Assembly: GCA_053919585.1 (NCBI GenBank)
Contig: JBSSHM010000258.1
Length of the DNA: 64,000 nucleotides
Source of the DNA: Euprymna scolopes
Lineage: Eukaryota
Strand: one strand, 5' to 3'
Program-made: the position numbers and the translations under genes
Shown here: piece by piece, positions 2,415 to 51,638 of the stretch
How positions within the stretch are numbered: position 1 is the first letter of the stretch
Layout: every line of letters starts with the position of its first letter
The notes under the pieces: model-generated
Told to the model about the DNA's origin: nothing
The model's input: only the letters and a program-made list of their open reading frames with translations
Database searches by the model: none

Positions 2415-3464
2415 TTAAAAATCAAACTGATATTGAAAGATAAAACTTTCTTTTTGTTCACCAAGAAATCCTATGTATTGTTTATTATTTGAACCAAGAT
2501 TGGCACTTACTAATAAACGATTATGTTTATCTGCTTGATAAACCGTACCAACATAGAGAAGTAGTTGGCTGTTAACATTTTCATCAAATGCTTCAGTTGA
2601 TCTAAAATAAATTTGCCAAAATCTATTGGGTGTCCAATCTATCTGAATGGTTGAAACATTACGTGATTTAGCTGCATCACTCCCGTAGGCGTGATCAACA
2701 TGGCTATAGTTATAAAACATTCCCCATAATGGCGAGAAATCAATATCCATACCAATATCATAATAACGGGTAGCATGAAAGGTTTGATTCCATGTGCTAC
2801 TATTGTTATATTCTTGAGCGGCAATACTTCCTTGAATCTTTAGGAGCTTGCCCATTTGATAGCCTAAACGTGTTGCTAATAGAGGAGCTTTTGAAAGATT
2901 TTCAATTGTTTTATTTTCGGTACTAATAAATTGTGCTCGATAAGCTGGGTTAAATACACCTATATCATAGACAAAGCCTTTTTTACTGTAGCGAATTTGT
3001 AGCCCTGTTGATTGTTTTGGTCCCATTAAATAATTAACTGTATGACTCCCTGTAATCGTGTCACGATCATGGTTAAGCATACCGAAAGGAATATTTTTAA
3101 ACCCTAAAATCAACTCCCAATTTTCACTCATGTTCATTCCTGTATAAGCTTCGCGAATAATTGATGGAATAGAGTTGGTGTAGCTTGAGGAATGGTTATA
3201 CTTTTCAAGTTGAAGATTGAGTTTGGCAAAACCTTTTGGAGTGTAGGTATCAAAGCCAAACCAAACTCGATCAGCGGCAAAATTTGCCTTATCATCTTTG
3301 ATTTGCAAAGATGAATGCAATTGTCCATTCATCCCAAATTGTATGACGGCAGAAGCATTCTGTATAAAAATAACTTGCCCTGCTATCAATACAGAGAGGA
3401 TGAAAATTCTATGATTAGTAATAATACTGCACAAAAGTTTAGCGAGTTGGAAATGATTATTCAA
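2415..3464 (-). CDS. Outer-membrane beta-barrel protein, porin-like
   Basis: Signal peptide, amphipathic beta-strand pattern, C-terminal FQYQFDF barrel signature; true start may be downstream. Confidence 0.65.
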   Translation of the reverse strand: MNNHFQLAKLLCSIITNHRIFILSVLIAGQVIFIQNASAVIQFGMNGQLHSSLQIKDDKANFAADRVWFGFDTYTPKGFAKLNLQLEKYNHSSSYTNSIPSIIREAYTGMNMSENWELILGFKNIPFGMLNHDRDTITGSHTVNYLMGPKQSTGLQIRYSKKGFVYDIGVFNPAYRAQFISTENKTIENLSKAPLLATRLGYQMGKLLKIQGSIAAQEYNNSSTWNQTFHATRYYDIGMDIDFSPLWGMFYNYSHVDHAYGSDAAKSRNVSTIQIDWTPNRFWQIYFRSTEAFDENVNSQLLLYVGTVYQADKHNRLLVSANLGSNNKQYIGFLGEQKESFIFQYQFDF

Positions 3465-6397: not shown

Positions 6398-6979
6398 CTA
6401 GGGCGTAAGTCCTCCAAAACCCATAAAGGATATTGCCATACATCCAGCTGTGATTAAAGCAATTGGTGCATGTTTAAATGGCATAGGGATGTCTGCACCA
6501 ACTAATCGCTCACGAATGGTTGAGAACAAAATTAATACAACCGTAAATCCCACGGCTGCACTAAAACCATACCATGCTGATTCAAATAAAGAGTTTGCAT
6601 GACGAGTATTCAAAAGTGCCACACCAAGCACCGCACAATTGCTGGTGATGAGTGGTAAATAAATACCCAGCATTTGATGAATTACAGGAACGAGCTTACG
6701 CATCATCAATTCGCAAATTCCTACAACGGAAGCAATTGTGATGATAAACACAATGGTTTGTAAATACACCACACCAAGTGGTAACAAAAGATAATGAAAT
6801 AGGGCGTAACTTAGAGTAGAAGTGGTCGTTAGCACAAAAGAGGTTGCTAACCCCATGCCTAATGCTGCTTCGGGTTTTTGTGATACCCCCATAAATGGAC
6901 ATAGTCCAAGAAACTTTACTAACACATAATTATTCACCAATACGGTGCCAATAAGAATCCAAATCCAATCCAAGTTCAA
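6398..6979 (-). CDS. rsxA: Rnf/Rsx electron transport complex subunit A
   Basis: VNNYVLVKFLGLCPFMGVS, LPLITSNCAVLG. Confidence 0.95.
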   Translation of the reverse strand: MNLDWIWILIGTVLVNNYVLVKFLGLCPFMGVSQKPEAALGMGLATSFVLTTTSTLSYALFHYLLLPLGVVYLQTIVFIITIASVVGICELMMRKLVPVIHQMLGIYLPLITSNCAVLGVALLNTRHANSLFESAWYGFSAAVGFTVVLILFSTIRERLVGADIPMPFKHAPIALITAGCMAISFMGFGGLTP

Positions 6980-7287
6980 ATCTAAAGAGTATTATTGTGT
7001 TTATTGTGATTCAAGCTATTTTATACAAAGGCAAAGATGCAAAATTTGTCTGGTAAAAGGTTGTAAAAATCGTGTACATATTCAATAAAAGCAACAAACA
7101 AAAGAGAGAACACGATTGATTAAAGCCTGAAATGATTATACCCTCAGTTTTTCAAGAATGCTACAAAATTAAAAACAGTACAAAGCAATAAGCAAAAATA
7201 GTGGCATTGCATAGCAAAATTATTCATCCCTATCACTTTACTCTTCTCCACAGGGATAAAAAATTAGGAAATAGGCTTTGGATTTGT

Positions 7288-7395
7288 TTATGGAATGGTT
7301 ACATCTAAGGTAACGGGGTCAGATTTACCCAAGTGGTTCATGGCATAAAGAGTAAATGTATATGTTCCTGCTCCTCCTAATGGGGTGGTGCACAT
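7288..7395 (-). pseudogene. Diverged fragment of the lipoprotein C-terminus (35 codons), copy 1
   Basis: Translates MCTTPLGGAGTYTFTLYAMNHLGKSDPVTLDVTIP*, homologous to ..NPLGGAGTYTFSVYAINHLGKAPKESITVVIP of the adjacent gene. Confidence 0.8.
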
Positions 7396-7483
7396 TCTCA
7401 AAGTCTCTGTAATAAATGGACAGTCCTTATGTTAGTTGATTATAGGTTAGTAAATATACTATATAAATATAAGCGATTTTCTC

Positions 7484-8656
7484 TTAAAATTTTCCTTCTG
7501 GAATCACGACAGTAATACTTTCTTTTGGTGCTTTGCCTAGATGATTGATGGCATAAACGCTGAAGGTGTATGTACCTGCTCCACCTAATGGATTGGTACG
7601 CACGTAAAGAGGAGCTTTATAAAAATCATCGCTATCTAATAAATGTAAAGTTTGTTTTCCATGTACTTTTGTTGAACTATTAAAGGTATTTTTCCTACCG
7701 ACACTATGCATTTGTGGAAATCCAGTGATGGTTTCATATTCAATGACATAGTATTGTGTATTCGGATCAATTCCTGTCCATTCTAATTCCACGGATTTGT
7801 CTGAATTGTAGCGGATAATTTTTAAACTGTTATCTGTAATACTGTCCTTCGGTGCCGTGGTAAAAGGCAAAAGGTGTGCTCGCATTATATTTCCCGTTAA
7901 TACGACTTCTATTTGTACTCTAAATGATTTTAAAGTAGAGTTGAATATAGATCCAAAATTCATGTTCCCACCAATTTCTCTTTTTGATGAAGGTCCTGGT
8001 CCATAAATATTCCACGGATCATGAATGCTATTATAAAATTGAATGTATAAGGCAGTATTATCTGAATATGCAATCTTATCCTCTTTATTAAGTATTTGGG
8101 TTCTACCAAGTGGTATCTCTTGGTTAAATACAATGTCCAAAATAGCCTCTTGCCTACCAGGAGGGTAAGTTGATTTCCCATTAATAACTGGAATGACTTC
8201 TATGGAATTCCAATCAAAGCGATCTGCTGTGCGTGTATTATCAGTTTTGACTGTGTAGGTGGCTGTATCAGATACTCCTAAGGAGTTATTATTTTTATCA
8301 AAGGCTTCTATAGTAAATTTATAGATGCCTTGTCGAACACCGATAATGTGATATCTACGACTAAAAAATCCCGTCATGGTGGGTACTTTATCTGAGTTAA
8401 TGTTGTAGTAAGAGACTTTAGCTGTTGGATTAGTCATTGTTTTTGCAGTAGTCCAGTTAGCAAATTTTTCCCATTCAATCCGCACATTGCCATGGCTAGT
8501 GGGTTCAAATATTTTCATGTATGAGGGGATGGAATTAGGATTAGGATTCTTATTTGAAACTGAATCATCAGAGGATGATGGACCACAGCCTTGAATAAAC
8601 AAAGCTAGAAATAACACTAAAGAGAATAGGGTAAAAGAGGTTATTTTTTTCATCAT
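7484..8656 (-). CDS. Surface lipoprotein with FN3/Ig-like domains, copy A (390 aa)
   Basis: Lipobox FIQG-C24, Ser/Asn/Pro linker, FN3-like patterns (VRIEW..YKFTIEAFD; VELEWT..YYVIEY..YTFSVYAIN); domain call inferred. Confidence 0.75.
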   Translation of the reverse strand: MMKKITSFTLFSLVLFLALFIQGCGPSSSDDSVSNKNPNPNSIPSYMKIFEPTSHGNVRIEWEKFANWTTAKTMTNPTAKVSYYNINSDKVPTMTGFFSRRYHIIGVRQGIYKFTIEAFDKNNNSLGVSDTATYTVKTDNTRTADRFDWNSIEVIPVINGKSTYPPGRQEAILDIVFNQEIPLGRTQILNKEDKIAYSDNTALYIQFYNSIHDPWNIYGPGPSSKREIGGNMNFGSIFNSTLKSFRVQIEVVLTGNIMRAHLLPFTTAPKDSITDNSLKIIRYNSDKSVELEWTGIDPNTQYYVIEYETITGFPQMHSVGRKNTFNSSTKVHGKQTLHLLDSDDFYKAPLYVRTNPLGGAGTYTFSVYAINHLGKAPKESITVVIPEGKF

Positions 8657-8766
8657 TTTTTGTATTTCAATCCTACATATATCTAGTTTAATACTATGTT
8701 AGTTGATTGTATCACTTTACTCTTCTCCACAGGGATAAAAAATTAGGAAATAGGCTTTGGATTTGT

Positions 8767-8874
8767 TTATGGAATGGTTACATCTAAGGTAACGGGGTCA
8801 GATTTACCCAAGTGGTTCATGGCATAAAGAGTAAATGTATATGTTCCTGCTCCTCCTAATGGGGTGGTGCACAT
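8767..8874 (-). pseudogene. Diverged fragment of the lipoprotein C-terminus, copy 2
   Basis: Identical to 7288-7395 at offset 1479. Confidence 0.8.
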
Positions 8875-8962
8875 TCTCAAAGTCTCTGTAATAAATGGAC
8901 AGTCCTTATGTTAGTTGATTATAGGTTAGTAAATATACTATATAAATATAAGCGATTTTCTC

Positions 8963-10147
8963 TTAAAATTTTCCTTCTGGAATCACGACAGTAATACTTT
9001 CTTTTGGTGCTTTGCCTAGATGATTGATGGCATAAACGCTGAAGGTGTATGTACCTGCTCCACCTAATGGATTGGTACGCACGTAAAGAGGAGCTTTATA
9101 AAAATCATCGCTATCTAATAAAAGTAAAGTTTGTTTTCCATGTACTTTTGTTGAACTATTAAAGGTATTTCTCCTACCGACACTATGCATTTGTGGAAAT
9201 CCAGTGATGGTTTCATATTCAATGACATAGTATTGTGTATTCGGATCAATTCCTGTCCATTCTAATTCCACGGATTTGTCTGAATTGTAGCGGATAATTT
9301 TTAAACTGTTATCTGTAATACTGTCCTTCGGTGCCGTGGTAAAAGGCAAAAGGTGTGCTCGCATTATATTTCCCGTTAATACGACTTCTATTTGTACTCT
9401 AAATGATTTTAAAGTAGAGTTGAATACAAATCCAAAACTTATGTCCCCACCAATTTCTCTTTTTGATGAAGGTCCTGGTCCATAAATATTCCACGGATTA
9501 TAAACGCCATTATAAAATTCAATGTATGTGCCAGTATTATTTGAATATGAAATCGTATCCTCTTTATTAGTTCTAGTAGCTTTATTAAGTATTTGGGTTC
9601 TACCAAGTGGTATCTCTTGGTTAAATACAATGTCCAAAATAGCCTCTTGCCTACCAGGAGGTCTAGTTGATTTCCCATTAATAACTGGAATGACTTCTAT
9701 GGAATTCCAATCAAAGCGATCTGCTGTGCGTGTATTATCAGTTTTGACTGTGTAGGTGGCTGTATCAGATACTCCTAAGGAGTTATTATTTTTATCAAAG
9801 GCTTCTATAGTAAATTTATAGATGCCTTGTCGAACACCGATAATGTGATATCTACGACTAAAAAATCCCGTCATGGTGGGTACTTTATCTGAGTTAATGT
9901 TGTAGTAAGAGACTTTAGCTGTTGGATTAGTCATTGTTTTTGCAGTAGTCCAGTTAGCAAATTTTTCCCATTCAATCCGCACATTGCCATGGCTAGTGGG
10001 TTCAAATATTTTCATGTATGAGGGGATGGGATTAGGATTCTTATTTGAAACTGAATCATCAGAGGATGATGGACCACAGCCTTGAATAAACAAAGCTAGA
10101 AATAACACTAAAGAGAATAGGGTAAAAGAGGTTATTTTTTTCATCAT
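8963..10147 (-). CDS. Surface lipoprotein with FN3/Ig-like domains, copy B (394 aa)
   Basis: Near-identical paralog of 7484-8656. Confidence 0.75.
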   Translation of the reverse strand: MMKKITSFTLFSLVLFLALFIQGCGPSSSDDSVSNKNPNPIPSYMKIFEPTSHGNVRIEWEKFANWTTAKTMTNPTAKVSYYNINSDKVPTMTGFFSRRYHIIGVRQGIYKFTIEAFDKNNNSLGVSDTATYTVKTDNTRTADRFDWNSIEVIPVINGKSTRPPGRQEAILDIVFNQEIPLGRTQILNKATRTNKEDTISYSNNTGTYIEFYNGVYNPWNIYGPGPSSKREIGGDISFGFVFNSTLKSFRVQIEVVLTGNIMRAHLLPFTTAPKDSITDNSLKIIRYNSDKSVELEWTGIDPNTQYYVIEYETITGFPQMHSVGRRNTFNSSTKVHGKQTLLLLDSDDFYKAPLYVRTNPLGGAGTYTFSVYAINHLGKAPKESITVVIPEGKF

Positions 10148-10302
10148 TTTTTGTATTTCAATCCTACATATATCTAGTTTAATACTATGTTAGTTAATTG
10201 TATCACTTTACTCTTCTCCACAGGGATAAAAAATTAGGGAATAGGCTTTGGATTTGTTTATGGAATTTTTACATCTAAGGTAACTTACATATGCATTAAC
10301 AT

Positions 10303-10885
10303 AGATTATCATTAATGTTAGTTTCTAAGTAAGATTATCATTAATGTTAGTTTCTAAGTAAGATTATCATTTGTTAGTTTCTAAGTAAGATTATCATTTG
10401 TTAGTTTCTAAGTAAGATTATCATTTGTTAGTTTCTAAGTAAGATTATCATTTGTTAGTTTCTAAGTAAGATTATCATTTGTTAGTTTCTAAGTAAGATT
10501 ATCATTTGTTAGTTTCTAAGTAAGATTATCATTTGTTAGTTTCTAAGTAAGATTATCATTTGTTAGTTTCTAAGTAAGATTATCATTTGTTAGTTTCTAA
10601 GTAAGATTATCATTTGTTAGTTTCTAAGTAAGATTATCATTTGTTAGTTTCTAAGTAAGATTATCATTTGTTAGTTTCTAAGTAAGATTATCATTTGTTA
10701 GTTTCTAAGTAAGATTATCATTTGTTAGTTTCTAAGTAAGATTATCATTTGTTAGTTTCTAAGTAAGATTATCATTTGTTAGTTTCTAAGTAAGATTATC
10801 ATTTGTTAGTTTCTAAGTAAGATTATCGTTTGTTAGTTTCTAAGTAAGATTATCGTTTGTTAGTTTCTAAGTAAGATTATCGTTT
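10303..10885. repeat. 27-bp tandem array (agattatcatttgttagtttctaagta), 21 full units plus a partial
   Basis: 2 x 29-bp variant, 17 x consensus, 2 x cgttt variant plus partial; stop codons in all six frames. Confidence 0.97.
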
Positions 10886-10892
10886 TTTTGTA

Positions 10893-10926
10893 TAAATTCG
10901 TGATTACCATAATAATCACGAATTTA
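10893..10926. promoter_or_regulatory. Perfect 14-6-14 inverted repeat (operator or recombination-site-like)
   Basis: taaattcgtgatta-ccataa-taatcacgaattta; palindrome seen directly, function inferred. Confidence 0.5.
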
Positions 10927-11040: not shown

Positions 11041-12075
11041 ATGATACCGAGTACAGCCTTATTTGTGATTGGCATTCAAGGAACAATGATAAGTTCCGAT
11101 GAGAAATATTGGTTACAACATCCGTTGACTGCTGGAGTTATTTTATTTGCTAGAAATTATGAAAGCCCTGAACAAATTCAATTGTTGATTCAGACATTAA
11201 GGAATACGGCAAAGCATGATATTCTTATTATGGTTGATCAAGAAGGTGGGCGAGTTCAACGTTTTATTAAAGGGTTTACCAAAATCCCTCCTATGGCTGA
11301 TTTAGGGGTGATTTATGATAAAAATCCTGAAAATGGACTTCTTTTTAGCACAGCTTTGGGTTATGTGTTGGCTTATGAAATTGCACAGTGTGATGTTGAT
11401 TTTAGCATTGCTCCTATGCTGGATGTGGAAACGTCTGTATCAAATAGTAATGTGATTGGGGATAGAGCATTTAGCAAGGATATTGGCAAAATTTTCCCAT
11501 TAGCCAAAGCATTTTATCAAGGAATGCGTGAGGCTGGAATGAGTGGAGTGGGTAAACATTTTCCCGGTCATGGACATGTTTCTGCTGATTCGCATGAATC
11601 TCTGCCAATTTATGATGGGGATTTTGCTAGTTTGGAGGAAAATGACCTGCCCCCTTTTAAAGATTTAATTCATGCAGGCATCCCTGCAATAATGCCTGCT
11701 CATATACTTTATTCTCAAGTTGACCCAGATTTTCCTGCGGGTTTTTCTACTATATGGTTGAATGAAATTTTACGCAAAAAGCTTAATTTTTCTGGTTGTA
11801 TTATTAGTGATGATTTGAATATGGCTGGCGCTTCTGCTTATGGAAATATGGCTAAACGTGTTGCTTTAGCTACAAGAAATTGTGATTTGATTTTGGTGAG
11901 CCATCCTCCTGAAGATATCAAGAAGGCATTTGAGAGTCAGATTCCTTGGGAGAATCCTTTGAGACAGAAAAGAATTAATGCATTGCGAAGAAATAAAGAA
12001 GCTCTTAGTGCTCAGCTGTATAAAGACAAGTTGAATTTACTTAAAAAGCATGCGATTGTTACTTCTATTTCATAA
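11041..12075 (+). CDS. nagZ: Beta-N-acetylhexosaminidase (GH3)
   Basis: VDQEGGRVQR, KHFPGHG..DSH, SDDLNMAG; ATG 11041 preferred over TTG 10993. Confidence 0.95.
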   Translation: MIPSTALFVIGIQGTMISSDEKYWLQHPLTAGVILFARNYESPEQIQLLIQTLRNTAKHDILIMVDQEGGRVQRFIKGFTKIPPMADLGVIYDKNPENGLLFSTALGYVLAYEIAQCDVDFSIAPMLDVETSVSNSNVIGDRAFSKDIGKIFPLAKAFYQGMREAGMSGVGKHFPGHGHVSADSHESLPIYDGDFASLEENDLPPFKDLIHAGIPAIMPAHILYSQVDPDFPAGFSTIWLNEILRKKLNFSGCIISDDLNMAGASAYGNMAKRVALATRNCDLILVSHPPEDIKKAFESQIPWENPLRQKRINALRRNKEALSAQLYKDKLNLLKKHAIVTSIS

Positions 12076-12248: not shown

Positions 12249-13355
12249 TTAGATTGCAGAGTGAAAAAAGTATAATGCTTTTTGGATGATGTCTTTAATT
12301 CTATCGTATTCAGAGTAGTCTTCACGATTGTTTTTGTAGGAGTGGTAAACTTGACGCCAATTGTCTTTAAATACTATCTTTTTCTTTTTACTTGCTTCAA
12401 TATTTAGAGTATAGATTTTTTTGAGCAAATGATTGTCATCAGTGGCTAAAATGTCATGAGAATGCATGGATAATTGAACTTTTATAACATCCTTTCCACT
12501 ATTGGCAACGTTTTTAAATCCTAATTCCTCCAAAGTGCTTTCAATATAGCTTCGGTATTCACGCAAATTGTTATCAAGATTGATTTGTATTTTTTGTGTT
12601 TCTAAAGAAGGTTGCATAAATGATATGAAGTACTCCCTATGCTCTCCCGGATTTAGATAGATATTTCCTTGAATAGTTAAGAAATTCCCCGGTTTGGTGA
12701 TTTTAAATGTGTGCCAACCCGGTAGTAAGTTGTCTATTGTTTGAATATCTTTGAAATGATTGCCGTTGAATTGTATATCTATTTCTTGGATTTCTCCAGT
12801 AAAGCTGATGCTTGATCGTTGAGTGAGTTTTTTTAAGTTTTGTTTTAAATCCGTGTATTCTTGACGATGCTGTTGTTGTATTTTATTGAGTATAACGCCT
12901 AAATTTAAAGAAATAAGAAGATCGAGTCTTTGTAATTTCTTGTTGATTTCTTTTAGTTCTCCTGCCTGCCAGTTATTTGCATCGCCTATATCCTTATAGA
13001 TGTCTGTTTTTAGGTAATTAAGCATAGAAAAGTAGTCATCTGACATTAAGCGGATAACTACATTGGTTTTTTTTCCATCTCTGCTTCTTCCTAGATTTTG
13101 TATGGATAAGTGTTTGCTGTCAATATAGAGATCGTCTAGTGTAATATAACGAGAATTATTCGGCAATTGGCTATATAATCGTTTGGCAATTTTTCCTTGT
13201 GCCTTGTGAATGGCTTCTTTAATATTAGCCCCCTCACCTGTTTCTTTGAATAAAAGGTTGTTGACATAATCCTCTGCTTTTGATTGTGAAGTTAGTATGG
13301 CAAAAGCAACAAAGAATACAATGTAATAAATATTCTTATCTCTAATTTTTAACAT
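12249..13355 (-). CDS. Hypothetical exported protein, possibly with a PEGA-like domain
   Basis: Signal peptide; LLPGWHTFKITKPG resembles a PEGA-type strand. Confidence 0.5.
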   Translation of the reverse strand: MLKIRDKNIYYIVFFVAFAILTSQSKAEDYVNNLLFKETGEGANIKEAIHKAQGKIAKRLYSQLPNNSRYITLDDLYIDSKHLSIQNLGRSRDGKKTNVVIRLMSDDYFSMLNYLKTDIYKDIGDANNWQAGELKEINKKLQRLDLLISLNLGVILNKIQQQHRQEYTDLKQNLKKLTQRSSISFTGEIQEIDIQFNGNHFKDIQTIDNLLPGWHTFKITKPGNFLTIQGNIYLNPGEHREYFISFMQPSLETQKIQINLDNNLREYRSYIESTLEELGFKNVANSGKDVIKVQLSMHSHDILATDDNHLLKKIYTLNIEASKKKKIVFKDNWRQVYHSYKNNREDYSEYDRIKDIIQKALYFFHSAI

Positions 13356-50330: not shown

Positions 50331-51001
50331 ATGCTTAAAAAAATAATTCTTGATGGAATTTGGGCAAAAAATCAAGCAACTTATGCCCTACTTGGATTAT
50401 GTCCACTATTAGCTGTTTCTAATTCAGTTATTAGTGCATTGGGACTTGGATTGGCGACTTTATTTGTACTTATTTGCTCAAATACCATCATTTCACTGTG
50501 CAAAGATTATATCCCTCATGAAACACGAATTCCAATATTTGTTGGTATCATTGCTTCAACAGTAACCATTGTTGAACTTATTCTTAATGCTTGGTGGCAT
50601 AATCTCTATCTAAAATTAGGAATTTTTATCCCACTTATTGTAACAAACTGTATTATTCTCGCTCGAGCAGAAAGCTATGCCAGTAAAAATACCCCTCTCC
50701 ACTCTGCATTTGATGGGCTTGCTATGGGCTTAGGATTTTTATTTGTCTTGGTTATTCTTGGTGCAATAAGAGAAATTCTAGGGCAAGGAACACTTATGCA
50801 AGATGCCCATCTCCTTTTTGGTGAGGTTGCTAGAAATTGGAGCATAAAACTTGCTGACTTTCGATTGATTGTTTCATTGCTCCTGCTGGAGCATTTATTA
50901 GCCTAGGTTTTATCGTGGCTTTGAAACAATATATAAGCTATCGAACGGAACAGAGCAAGAACAATCATCCACGAGAAATCAATGATAATATTACCGCATG
51001 A
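50331..51001 (+). CDS. rsxE: Rnf/Rsx electron transport complex subunit E, frameshift near C-terminus
   Basis: [28 protein letters not shown]; precedes nth. Confidence 0.93.
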
Positions 51002-51638
51002 ATAAGCAACACAGAGCGGCATTTTATCAAAATTAGCAGAAAATACTCCCAATCCCACCACAGAGCTAAAATATAGCTCTACCTTTGAATTGCTTATTGC
51101 CGTTATACTCTCTGCTCAAGCTACAGATATCAGCGTCAATAAAGCCACGGCAAAACTCTATCCACTTGCTAACACACCTGAGCAAATACTTGCACTCGGT
51201 GAAAATGGCTTAAAACTTTACATCAAAACAATTGGCTTGTACCACAGCAAAGCTGAAAATGTCATTGCCACTTGTCAACAATTAATCGAAAAACACAACA
51301 GTCAAGTTCCTGATAATCGTAAAGATTTAGAAGCTCTTCCCGGTGTTGGACGCAAAACGGCTAATGTCGTCCTCAATACCGCTTATGGACAATTAACCAT
51401 GGCAGTTGACACACATATTTATCGGGTATCCAATCGCACTGGTTTAGCCAAAGGAAAAACACCCTTATTAGTTGAAAAGAAATTACTTAAAGTTACACCA
51501 AAGGCATACTTGAAAGATGCACACCACCTTCTTATCCTGCATGGACGTTATATATGTAAAGCACGAAAACCACTGTGTGAAAGCTGTGTTGTTTATAATG
51601 AATGTGATTATCCAAGGCAACAAAAATCCAAGCTTTAA
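50998..51638 (+). CDS. nth: Endonuclease III, N-terminal frameshift
   Basis: LSAQATD, LPGVGRKTANV, VDTH, CKARKPLCESC. Confidence 0.95.

What the first reader, a model, noticed from the sequence alone, without database searches (positions are those of the whole stretch)
10303..10885. 21-copy non-coding 27-bp satellite upstream of the variable lipoprotein locus
Seen: near-perfect head-to-tail array with no spacers and stops in all six frames. Variants are polarised (29-bp at left, consensus in the middle, cgttt at right), typical of slippage or unequal exchange. It lies between divergent genes (lipoprotein B and nagZ) and abuts the truncated third repeat unit. Each consensus unit carries AATGATAATC on the minus strand, 10 contiguous bases of the Fur consensus (12-13/19 overall). 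Inference: a protein-binding array (Fur polymerisation, decoy, iteron- or centromere-like) or a length-variable expression tuner.
Basis: partly seen in the sequence, partly recalled or inferred. Interest (0 to 1): 0.75.

Follow-up and report, generated by a model that had tools for sequence, protein, structure and literature searches.

The report
Unique 27-bp intergenic repeat array
A real, near-perfect 21-copy 27-bp DNA repeat lies between a duplicated orphan lipoprotein gene and nagZ in a bacterial contig from a squid assembly; it looks like a young, unstable minisatellite that might tune its neighbours, and its likeness to an iron-regulator (Fur) site is no better than chance.

Summary
At 10303-10885 there are 21.4 head-to-tail copies: two 29-bp units, 17 identical 27-bp units, two A-to-G units and a 12-bp stub. 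The array has stops in all six frames and is 22% G+C against 35% for the window. It lies between divergent lipoprotein gene B and nagZ, 18 bp from the truncated third copy of a 1.49-kb lipoprotein duplication.

The unit occurs nowhere else in the 5.9-Gb assembly. It gave no hit in the metagenome, plasmid or phage collections, or in Rfam. The nearest NagZ relatives (61% identity or less) have short upstream regions with no array and no such lipoprotein.

The Fur reading fails its own test. The unit matches 12/19 of the consensus (13/19 for the 29-bp variant). Shuffled units reach that in 5-15% of trials, and 301 other 19-mers in the window score at least 12. Nine other binding-site consensuses, promoter hexamers and RNA folding are also at background.

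Best reading: a lineage-specific, recently homogenised minisatellite made by slippage or unequal exchange. Any effect would come from its length and AT-richness upstream of lipoprotein B and nagZ. This is a new member of a known kind, of modest interest. Earlier notes of this scan describe the same locus, not this array elsewhere.

The parts
10303..10360 (.). Two 29-bp edge units (ATTAATGTT variant), probably the older form of the repeat
10361..10819 (.). Seventeen identical 27-bp units (459 bp of perfect repeat), the homogenised core
10820..10885 (.). Two 27-bp units with one A->G change, plus a 12-bp partial unit carrying the same change
10285..10302 (.). Unique 18-bp junction between the duplicated lipoprotein module and the array
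10201..10284 (-). 84-bp start of a third copy of the 1.49-kb duplication. It carries the last codons and stop of a relic lipoprotein C-terminus. The same element flanks both full copies, which fits duplication by unequal exchange between flanking repeats.
8963..10147 (-). Lipoprotein gene B (394 aa, signal peptide with a lipobox-like GC). It has no Pfam or NCBIfam family and no homologue by word search. Its start codon is 156 bp from the array.
7484..8656 (-). Lipoprotein gene A, the near-identical twin. It shares about 137 bp of proximal upstream DNA with gene B (98% identity over the 256-nt repeat pair 8538-8793 / 10029-10284), but a relic cassette, not the array, lies beyond that.
10893..10926 (+). 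Perfect 14-bp-stem hairpin 7 bp after the array (-15 kcal/mol, z = -6). It is terminator-like on the plus strand (tail ACTTTTATGT) and could instead be a palindromic operator. It occurs only once in the window.
11041..12075 (+). nagZ (beta-N-acetylhexosaminidase). Its ATG is 156 bp from the array end.

Best explanation
The array is a genuine, lineage-specific bacterial minisatellite (VNTR). A 27-29-bp sequence in the divergent lipoprotein B / nagZ intergenic region was amplified by slipped-strand mispairing or unequal exchange and recently homogenised: 17 identical core units, with older variants kept at both edges. It sits at the edge of a locus that has already undergone unequal exchange, the 1.49-kb lipoprotein duplication. 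It does not code, does not fold as RNA, and shows no better-than-chance site for Fur or for any other regulator tested. Any function is therefore most likely not sequence-specific. It is the most AT-rich 583 bp of the window and stretches the divergent intergenic gap from about 310 to 893 bp. That makes it a length-variable upstream spacer, and it is the only cis difference beyond the shared proximal promoter region of the twin lipoprotein genes. Gain or loss of 27-bp units (about 206 degrees of helical rotation each) could shift lipoprotein B expression, and perhaps nagZ expression, in subpopulations. Shown here: anatomy, uniqueness, absence from relatives, Fur at background. Inferred: instability, mode of origin, and any effect on expression.
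For: Anatomy and polarity of variants. No coding potential. Unit unique in the 5.9-Gb assembly apart from one 3-mismatch chance hit on a host contig. No hit in metagenome contigs, plasmids, phages or Rfam. NagZ relatives at 59-61% identity have 20-183-bp upstream regions without an array or the lipoprotein. No comparable non-coding array in 0.97 Mb of other nagZ neighbourhoods. Lowest G+C of any 583-bp stretch in the window. The adjacent 1.49-kb duplication has an 84-bp flanking repeat, which shows unequal exchange at this locus. Published precedents exist for intergenic or promoter tandem repeats whose copy number changes transcription: Mannheimia lkt promoter (PMC2697988), M. tuberculosis 54-58-bp promoter repeats varying at 10^-2 to 10^-3 per chromosome (PMC12817950), and group A Streptococcus intergenic VNTRs (PMC6193603).
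Against: There is no expression data. The array lies at least 156 bp from both start codons and outside the about 137 bp of proximal upstream DNA that gene A also has, so it may have no effect at all. Known tuners usually have 1-10-bp units inside or next to the core promoter, or units that each carry a promoter. Here the promoter-like score per unit is at background. A 21-copy perfect array may be hard to keep without selection, which leaves room for a specific function that these tests cannot see.
Confidence: 0.55

Rival explanations
1. Array of sites for an unknown sequence-specific DNA-binding protein (a regulator platform, decoy, or iteron- or centromere-like element), possibly the same factor that would bind a related motif near the lipoprotein promoters.
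For: There are 21 identical sites. The 29-bp units share the 9-mer ATGTTAGTT with a 14-bp motif that lies upstream of each lipoprotein gene and each relic cassette. Each unit holds two small palindromes, GATTATC and TTAG-N3-CTAA (reading of the sequence). Precedent, from my own knowledge: F-plasmid sopC has 12 x 43-bp repeats.
Against: A shared 9-mer with the locus's intergenic DNA arises in 36% of shuffled units, and the majority 27-bp unit lacks it. No local alignment of the unit to the rest of the window exceeds the shuffled range. None of ten consensus motifs is significant. No rep, par or regulator gene lies next to the array. The 27-bp spacing puts successive sites on nearly opposite faces of the helix.
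Confidence: 0.12
2. Promoter tandem repeat or transcribed repeat: units act as weak promoters or UP-like elements, or the array is transcribed on the plus strand and stopped by the hairpin at 10893-10926, giving a repeat RNA or an attenuated nagZ leader.
For: Each unit has TTGTTA-15 nt-TATCAT on the plus strand (9/12). A promoter-like site (9/12) spans the junction at 10284-10312. A strong hairpin with a short T-tail follows the array on the plus strand. M. tuberculosis promoter tandem repeats are a precedent (PMC12817950).
Against: 40% of shuffled units reach 9/12, and the spacer is only 15 nt. The regional promoter-like count equals the shuffled expectation, 24 against 23.7. Array RNA is unstructured on both strands, z = -0.3 and -1.2. 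There is no Rfam match even at E of 1 or below. There is no RNA data.
Confidence: 0.1
3. Fur-binding array (Fur polymerisation or iron-responsive decoy).
For: AATGATAATC, 10 contiguous consensus bases, is in every unit. The match is 12/19, or 13/19 in the 29-bp units. Fur was the best of the ten consensuses tried.
Against: The probability under unit shuffling is 0.15 (27-bp) or 0.05 (29-bp), before correcting for ten motifs. In the rest of the window 301 19-mers score at least 12 and 56 score at least 13, and the best (15/19) lies inside the nth coding region. Only one 7-1-7 half-site is present (10/14). The hexamer model scores 11/15, below the shuffled mean. The neighbours are a lipoprotein of unknown function and nagZ, not iron genes. 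No fur gene was found, but the assembly may hold little of this bacterium beyond the 66.7-kb contig, so that is uninformative.
Confidence: 0.03
4. Assembly artefact: the array or its length was created by the assembler.
For: Raw reads could not be examined. The contig is a short (66,660 bp) cobiont contig in a eukaryote assembly.
Against: The ordered edge variants (two 29-bp units on the left, two A->G units plus a stub on the right) and clean unique junctions on both sides are what a real minisatellite looks like. At 583 bp, the array is well inside long-read lengths. That argument rests on inference, because the sequencing technology is not known to me.
Confidence: 0.03

Closest known systems
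Bacterial intergenic VNTRs / minisatellites (MLVA-type loci; intergenic VNTRs that control transcription in group A Streptococcus, cited in PMC6193603)
   Same: A head-to-tail, near-identical, non-coding array in an intergenic region. Edge units have diverged and core units are homogenised. The presumed origin is slipped-strand mispairing.
   Different: Copy-number polymorphism, the defining property, could not be tested here. Twenty-one copies of a 27-bp unit is large: none was comparable in 0.97 Mb of control loci.
Mycobacterium tuberculosis promoter tandem repeats (dop, lpdA, cysG; 54-58-bp units; PMC12817950)
   Same: Long-unit repeats upstream of genes, hypervariable in copy number, proposed to give phase-variable expression.
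   Different: There each unit carries a promoter and lies 12-29 bp from the gene. Here the array is 156 bp from either start codon and its promoter-likeness is at background.
Mannheimia haemolytica leukotoxin promoter repeats (10-bp A-tract units, 2-5 copies; PMC2697988)
   Same: Lineage-specific tandem repeats upstream of a conserved core promoter in a gammaproteobacterial intergenic region. Perfect repeats are seen as slippage hotspots.
   Different: Those units are in phase with the helix and act through curvature. Here 27 bp is 2.57 turns, so bends cannot add up in phase. The copy number here is also about 5 times higher.
Contingency loci upstream of variable surface proteins (from my own knowledge: M. 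gallisepticum vlhA GAA repeats, H. influenzae hmw 7-bp repeats, N. meningitidis nadA TAAA)
   Same: A hypermutable repeat upstream of a duplicated, diversifying lipoprotein or surface-protein gene.
   Different: Those units are 3-7 bp and sit at defined distances from the promoter. No switching has been shown here.
Fur box arrays; plasmid iterons and sopC-type centromeres
   Same: Tandem direct repeats that could carry one protein-binding site each. Each unit has a Fur half-site-like 10-mer.
   Different: The Fur score is at background. There are no rep or par genes, no strong dyad, and the spacing is out of phase.

Membership tests
Bacterial VNTR / minisatellite | Head-to-tail repeats of a unit of 10 bp or more with high identity, non-coding | tested here: met
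   21.4 copies, 99% matches, stops in all six frames
Bacterial VNTR / minisatellite | Copy number differs among cells, strains or reads | not testable with these tools
No second copy of the locus in the assembly, in metagenomes or on record.
Fur-regulated operator / Fur array | A site clearly above background against the 19-bp consensus, the 7-1-7 dyad or three NATWAT hexamers | tested here: not met
   12-13/19 (p 0.15 / 0.05 by unit shuffling), 10/14 (p about 0.1), hexamers 11/15 (p 0.78). 301 other 19-mers in the window score at least 12. The consensus was typed from my own knowledge.
Fur-regulated operator / Fur array | fur gene present, and iron-related genes under the site | tested here: inconclusive
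   No PF01475 match in the assembly, but no bacterial 16S gene or other sign of the rest of this bacterium's genome turned up beyond the 66.7-kb contig. The neighbours are an orphan lipoprotein and nagZ.
Promoter tandem repeat / contingency promoter repeat | The repeat carries or interrupts a core promoter (-35/-10), or lies within the promoter spacer | tested here: not met
   Best per-unit match is 9/12 with a 15-nt spacer, reached by 40% of shuffles. The array lies outside the about 137 bp of proximal upstream DNA shared with gene A.
Promoter tandem repeat / contingency promoter repeat | Copy number changes expression of the adjacent gene | not testable with these tools
   No RNA data or reporter assay available
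Iterons / sopC- or parC-type centromere | Adjacent rep or par genes, and repeats phased with the helix or carrying a dyad bound by the partner protein | tested here: not met
   The neighbours are a lipoprotein, nagZ, tRNA-His and a secreted protein of unknown function. One unit is 2.57 turns. The dyad arms are only 4 bp.
Structured non-coding RNA / CRISPR | A conserved fold or Rfam match; for CRISPR, unique spacers between repeats | tested here: not met
   No Rfam hit at E of 1 or below. Fold z = -0.3 and -1.2. The units abut with no spacers.

The most novel reading that the evidence does not exclude
The array is a working switch for the diversifying twin-lipoprotein locus. In this reading it is either a platform of 21 sites for an unknown regulator, or a repeat transcript stopped by the adjacent hairpin. 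Gain and loss of 27-bp units would then turn lipoprotein B on or off independently of its twin. That would be a contingency locus with an unusually long unit and copy number in an uncultured marine, animal-associated gammaproteobacterium.
Probability: 0.12. Interest if true: 0.6.

Novelty: new member of a known kind. Interest (0 to 1): 0.3.

Why it matters
If the array is length-polymorphic and affects lipoprotein B, it would add a long-unit minisatellite to the known ways bacteria vary surface proteins. It would also give a handle on an orphan, apparently diversifying lipoprotein in an uncultured bacterium found with a squid. It would be a ready strain-typing marker as well. As it stands, the main value of this follow-up is negative: the Fur reading should be dropped, and the motif link to the lipoprotein promoters is at chance level.

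Tried and rejected
1. Fur. The consensus, 7-1-7 and hexamer models are all at background. The best Fur-like site in the window lies inside the nth coding region.

2. Other consensuses: IHF, DnaA, Fis, CRP, LexA, H-NS, Lrp and ArgR, all typed from my own knowledge. None is significant.

3. Promoter in each unit. At background.

4. Structured RNA. No Rfam hit and no fold signal.

5. Coding repeat. Stops in all six frames.

6. Origin from local sequence, or a shared operator with the lipoprotein promoters. Only a 9-mer is shared, which 36% of shuffles also achieve. No significant local alignment anywhere in the window.

7. dif/Xer-like site, prompted by the 28-bp length and the ATGTTA core. By eye, 8/11 in the XerD arm but 2/11 in the XerC arm. 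Rejected, with no tool test.

8. Other copies or relatives.
- The 27-mer is absent from the rest of the assembly, metagenome contigs, plasmids and phages.
- Lipoprotein B has no homologues by word search or metagenome scan.
- The exact-protein look-ups were empty.
- The loci of the NagZ relatives are not in the species-genome collection, so no family-wide pattern scan was possible.

10. Wedge-model curvature was not computed, because the parameters would have come from memory. Only helical-phase arithmetic was done.

Full report
**What is there.** The sequence at 10303-10885 is a head-to-tail array. Tandem Repeats Finder gives period 27, 21.4 copies, 99% matches and score 1109, far above the other three trivial rows in the window.
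- Parsed on its AGATTATC anchor, it consists of two 29-bp units (10303-10360), 17 identical 27-bp units (10361-10819), two units with a single A-to-G change (10820-10873) and a 12-bp stub with the same change (10874-10885).
- The 27-mer gives 19 matches at 3 or fewer mismatches, against none in 100 dinucleotide-preserving shuffles.
- All six frames are closed: 21-38 stops each, with the longest open stretch 12 codons.
- The array is 22% G+C against 35% for the window. It is the most AT-rich 583-bp stretch of the 64 kb.

**Setting.** The window is the first 64 kb of a 66,660-bp contig (C173) in a 5.9-Gb, 925-contig assembly.
- The contig is bacterial throughout. It carries glnE, rnfA, nagZ, epmA and tRNA genes.
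- The rest of the assembly is an animal genome. The only small-subunit rRNA hits are tandem host rDNA copies. Earlier notes of this scan call the host a squid.
- No bacterial 16S gene and no Fur-family gene were found anywhere in the assembly. The assembly may therefore hold little of this bacterium beyond this contig.
- Its NagZ is at most 61% identical to anything in the large protein collection. The nearest hits are metagenome-assembled Gammaproteobacteria, one labelled Ostreibacterium.

**Local anatomy.**
- On the minus strand lie two near-identical lipoprotein genes, A (7484-8656) and B (8963-10147). They are parts of a 1.49-kb tandem duplication.
- Each copy is followed by a relic of an alternative lipoprotein C-terminus.
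- The periodic region runs from 7231 to about 10284, which is two copies plus 84 bp. That is the pattern expected when a gene flanked by an 84-bp direct repeat is duplicated by unequal exchange.
- After an 18-bp unique junction (10285-10302) the array begins.
- Its other end is followed, 7 bp on, by a perfect 14-bp-stem hairpin (10893-10926; -15 kcal/mol, z = -6). The hairpin is terminator-like on the plus strand and unique in the window.
- nagZ starts at 11041. Both start codons are therefore 156 bp from the array, and the array stretches the divergent intergenic gap from about 310 to 893 bp.
- Genes A and B share about 137 bp of proximal upstream DNA (98% identity over the 256-nt repeat pair that contains it). 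The array is the only upstream feature that gene B has and gene A lacks.

**Is it found elsewhere?** No.
- The unit occurs only in C173 within the whole assembly, apart from one 3-mismatch hit on a host chromosome that I take for chance.
- It is absent from the metagenome contigs as an exact 27-mer. The whole intergenic region has no blastn match in the plasmid or phage collections. There is no Rfam family, even at E of 1 or below.
- Lipoprotein B has no homologue by word search or in the metagenome scan. Exact-sequence look-ups for NagZ and lipoprotein B were empty.
- In the three closest NagZ contexts I could fetch, the DNA upstream of nagZ is 20-183 bp, with no repeat and no such lipoprotein. 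In one lineage glnE is the divergent neighbour.
- A TRF scan of 0.97 Mb of other nagZ neighbourhoods found no comparable non-coding array. The best was 8 copies of a 12-mer at a contig end.

The array is therefore lineage-specific and rare. Judged by its 17 identical core units, it was recently expanded or homogenised.

**The Fur hypothesis.** Consensus sequences here are from my own knowledge.
- Against the 19-bp consensus, the 27-bp unit scores 12/19 and the 29-bp unit 13/19.
- Composition-matched shuffled units, read as tandem arrays, reach these values in 15% and 5% of trials.
- Outside the array the window has 301 19-mers scoring at least 12 and 56 scoring at least 13. The best, at 15/19, lies inside the endonuclease III (nth) coding region.
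- The 7-1-7 dyad model finds one half-site only (10/14, p about 0.1). The three-hexamer model scores 11/15, below the shuffled mean.
- Neither neighbour gene has a known link to iron.

**Other specific readings.**
- Eight further binding-site consensuses are all at background: IHF, DnaA, Fis, CRP, LexA, H-NS, Lrp and ArgR.
- The best promoter-like match within a unit is TTGTTA, 15 nt, TATCAT (9/12). It is reached by 40% of shuffled units. The regional count of promoter-like sites equals the shuffled expectation.
- Three-unit RNA folds are unremarkable on both strands.
- A separate note of this scan says that the satellite core matches a motif upstream of every gene and cassette. A 14-mer, TATGTTAGTTGATT, does lie upstream of each lipoprotein gene and each relic cassette, and nowhere else in the window at 1 or fewer mismatches. 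The array shares only the 9-mer ATGTTAGTT with it, and only in the two 29-bp units.
- 36% of shuffled units share some 9-mer with the locus's intergenic DNA. No local alignment of the unit to the window exceeds the shuffled range. The link is at chance level.
- Geometry also argues against cooperative one-face binding. One 27-bp unit is 2.57 helical turns, so neighbouring units are rotated by about 206 degrees.

**Most likely explanation.** This is a bacterial minisatellite. It was born by slippage or unequal exchange in an intergenic region beside a locus that demonstrably undergoes unequal exchange.
- Perfect arrays of this kind are known slippage hotspots (PMC2697988).
- In M. tuberculosis, 54-58-bp promoter repeats vary at 10^-2 to 10^-3 per chromosome within isogenic cultures (PMC12817950).

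By analogy, the most plausible effect here is a non-specific one: a very AT-rich, length-variable upstream spacer that separates the two divergent promoter regions and distinguishes gene B from gene A. Only the anatomy, the uniqueness and the negative motif tests are shown. Instability and any effect on expression are inferred. I put about 0.55 on this reading, which includes the possibility that the effect is nil. I put about 0.12 on an unknown sequence-specific binding protein, about 0.10 on a promoter or transcribed-repeat role linked to the hairpin, and about 0.03 each on Fur and on an assembly artefact.

**Limits.** I did not try again. No close relative of the bacterium is available, and the loci of the nearest NagZ relatives are not in the species-genome collection.

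**Verdict.** A real and locally striking repeat, a new member of the known class of bacterial intergenic VNTRs. The Fur, iteron and centromere interpretations are unsupported. Modest interest (0.3), mainly because it sits upstream of a duplicated, apparently diversifying orphan lipoprotein.

Noticed in passing
window 10893-10926: Perfect 14-bp-stem, 6-nt-loop hairpin 7 bp after the array and 115 bp before the nagZ ATG (z about -6 on both strands). It is terminator-like on the plus strand, although no plus-strand gene lies upstream. It could be an operator palindrome, an insulating terminator, or the end of an unannotated transcript.
   Followed up: partly
window 7428-7441, 8695-8708, 8907-8920, 10186-10199: The 14-mer TATGTTAGTTGATT (one mismatch in the last copy) lies about 40 bp upstream of each lipoprotein start codon and just upstream of each relic C-terminal cassette. 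It occurs nowhere else in the window at 1 or fewer mismatches. Two of the four copies come from the duplication, so there are only two independent occurrences. It is a candidate operator or recombination site for the lipoprotein locus, separate from the array.
   Followed up: partly
window 7231-7314, 8710-8793, 10201-10284: An 84-bp element (the tail of a relic lipoprotein C-terminus plus downstream DNA) flanks both copies of the 1.49-kb lipoprotein module. The twin genes therefore probably arose by unequal exchange between pre-existing direct repeats. The copy next to the array has lost the rest of its cassette.
   Followed up: partly
window 6398-6979 and 50331-51638: rnfA stands alone on the minus strand next to the lipoprotein locus. 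rnfE-nth lies 43 kb away on the plus strand, and no rnfB, C, D or G lies directly upstream of rnfE, where radA, folE2 and small unknown ORFs sit instead (the rest of the window was not scanned for them). glnE, the divergent neighbour of nagZ in one related lineage, is here inverted and separated from nagZ by rnfA, the lipoproteins and the array. The region looks rearranged.
   Followed up: partly
G000 assembly as a whole: No bacterial 16S gene and no Fur-family gene were found in the 5.9-Gb assembly. The 66.7-kb contig C173 may be the only piece, or one of very few pieces, of this bacterium that was kept.
   Followed up: partly
window 12249-13355 and 2415-3464 (minus strand): Two further genes have no Pfam or NCBIfam family. 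One is a 368-aa protein with a signal peptide, next to tRNA-His. The other is a 349-aa protein with a C-terminal aromatic residue, which looks like an outer-membrane beta-barrel.
   Followed up: no
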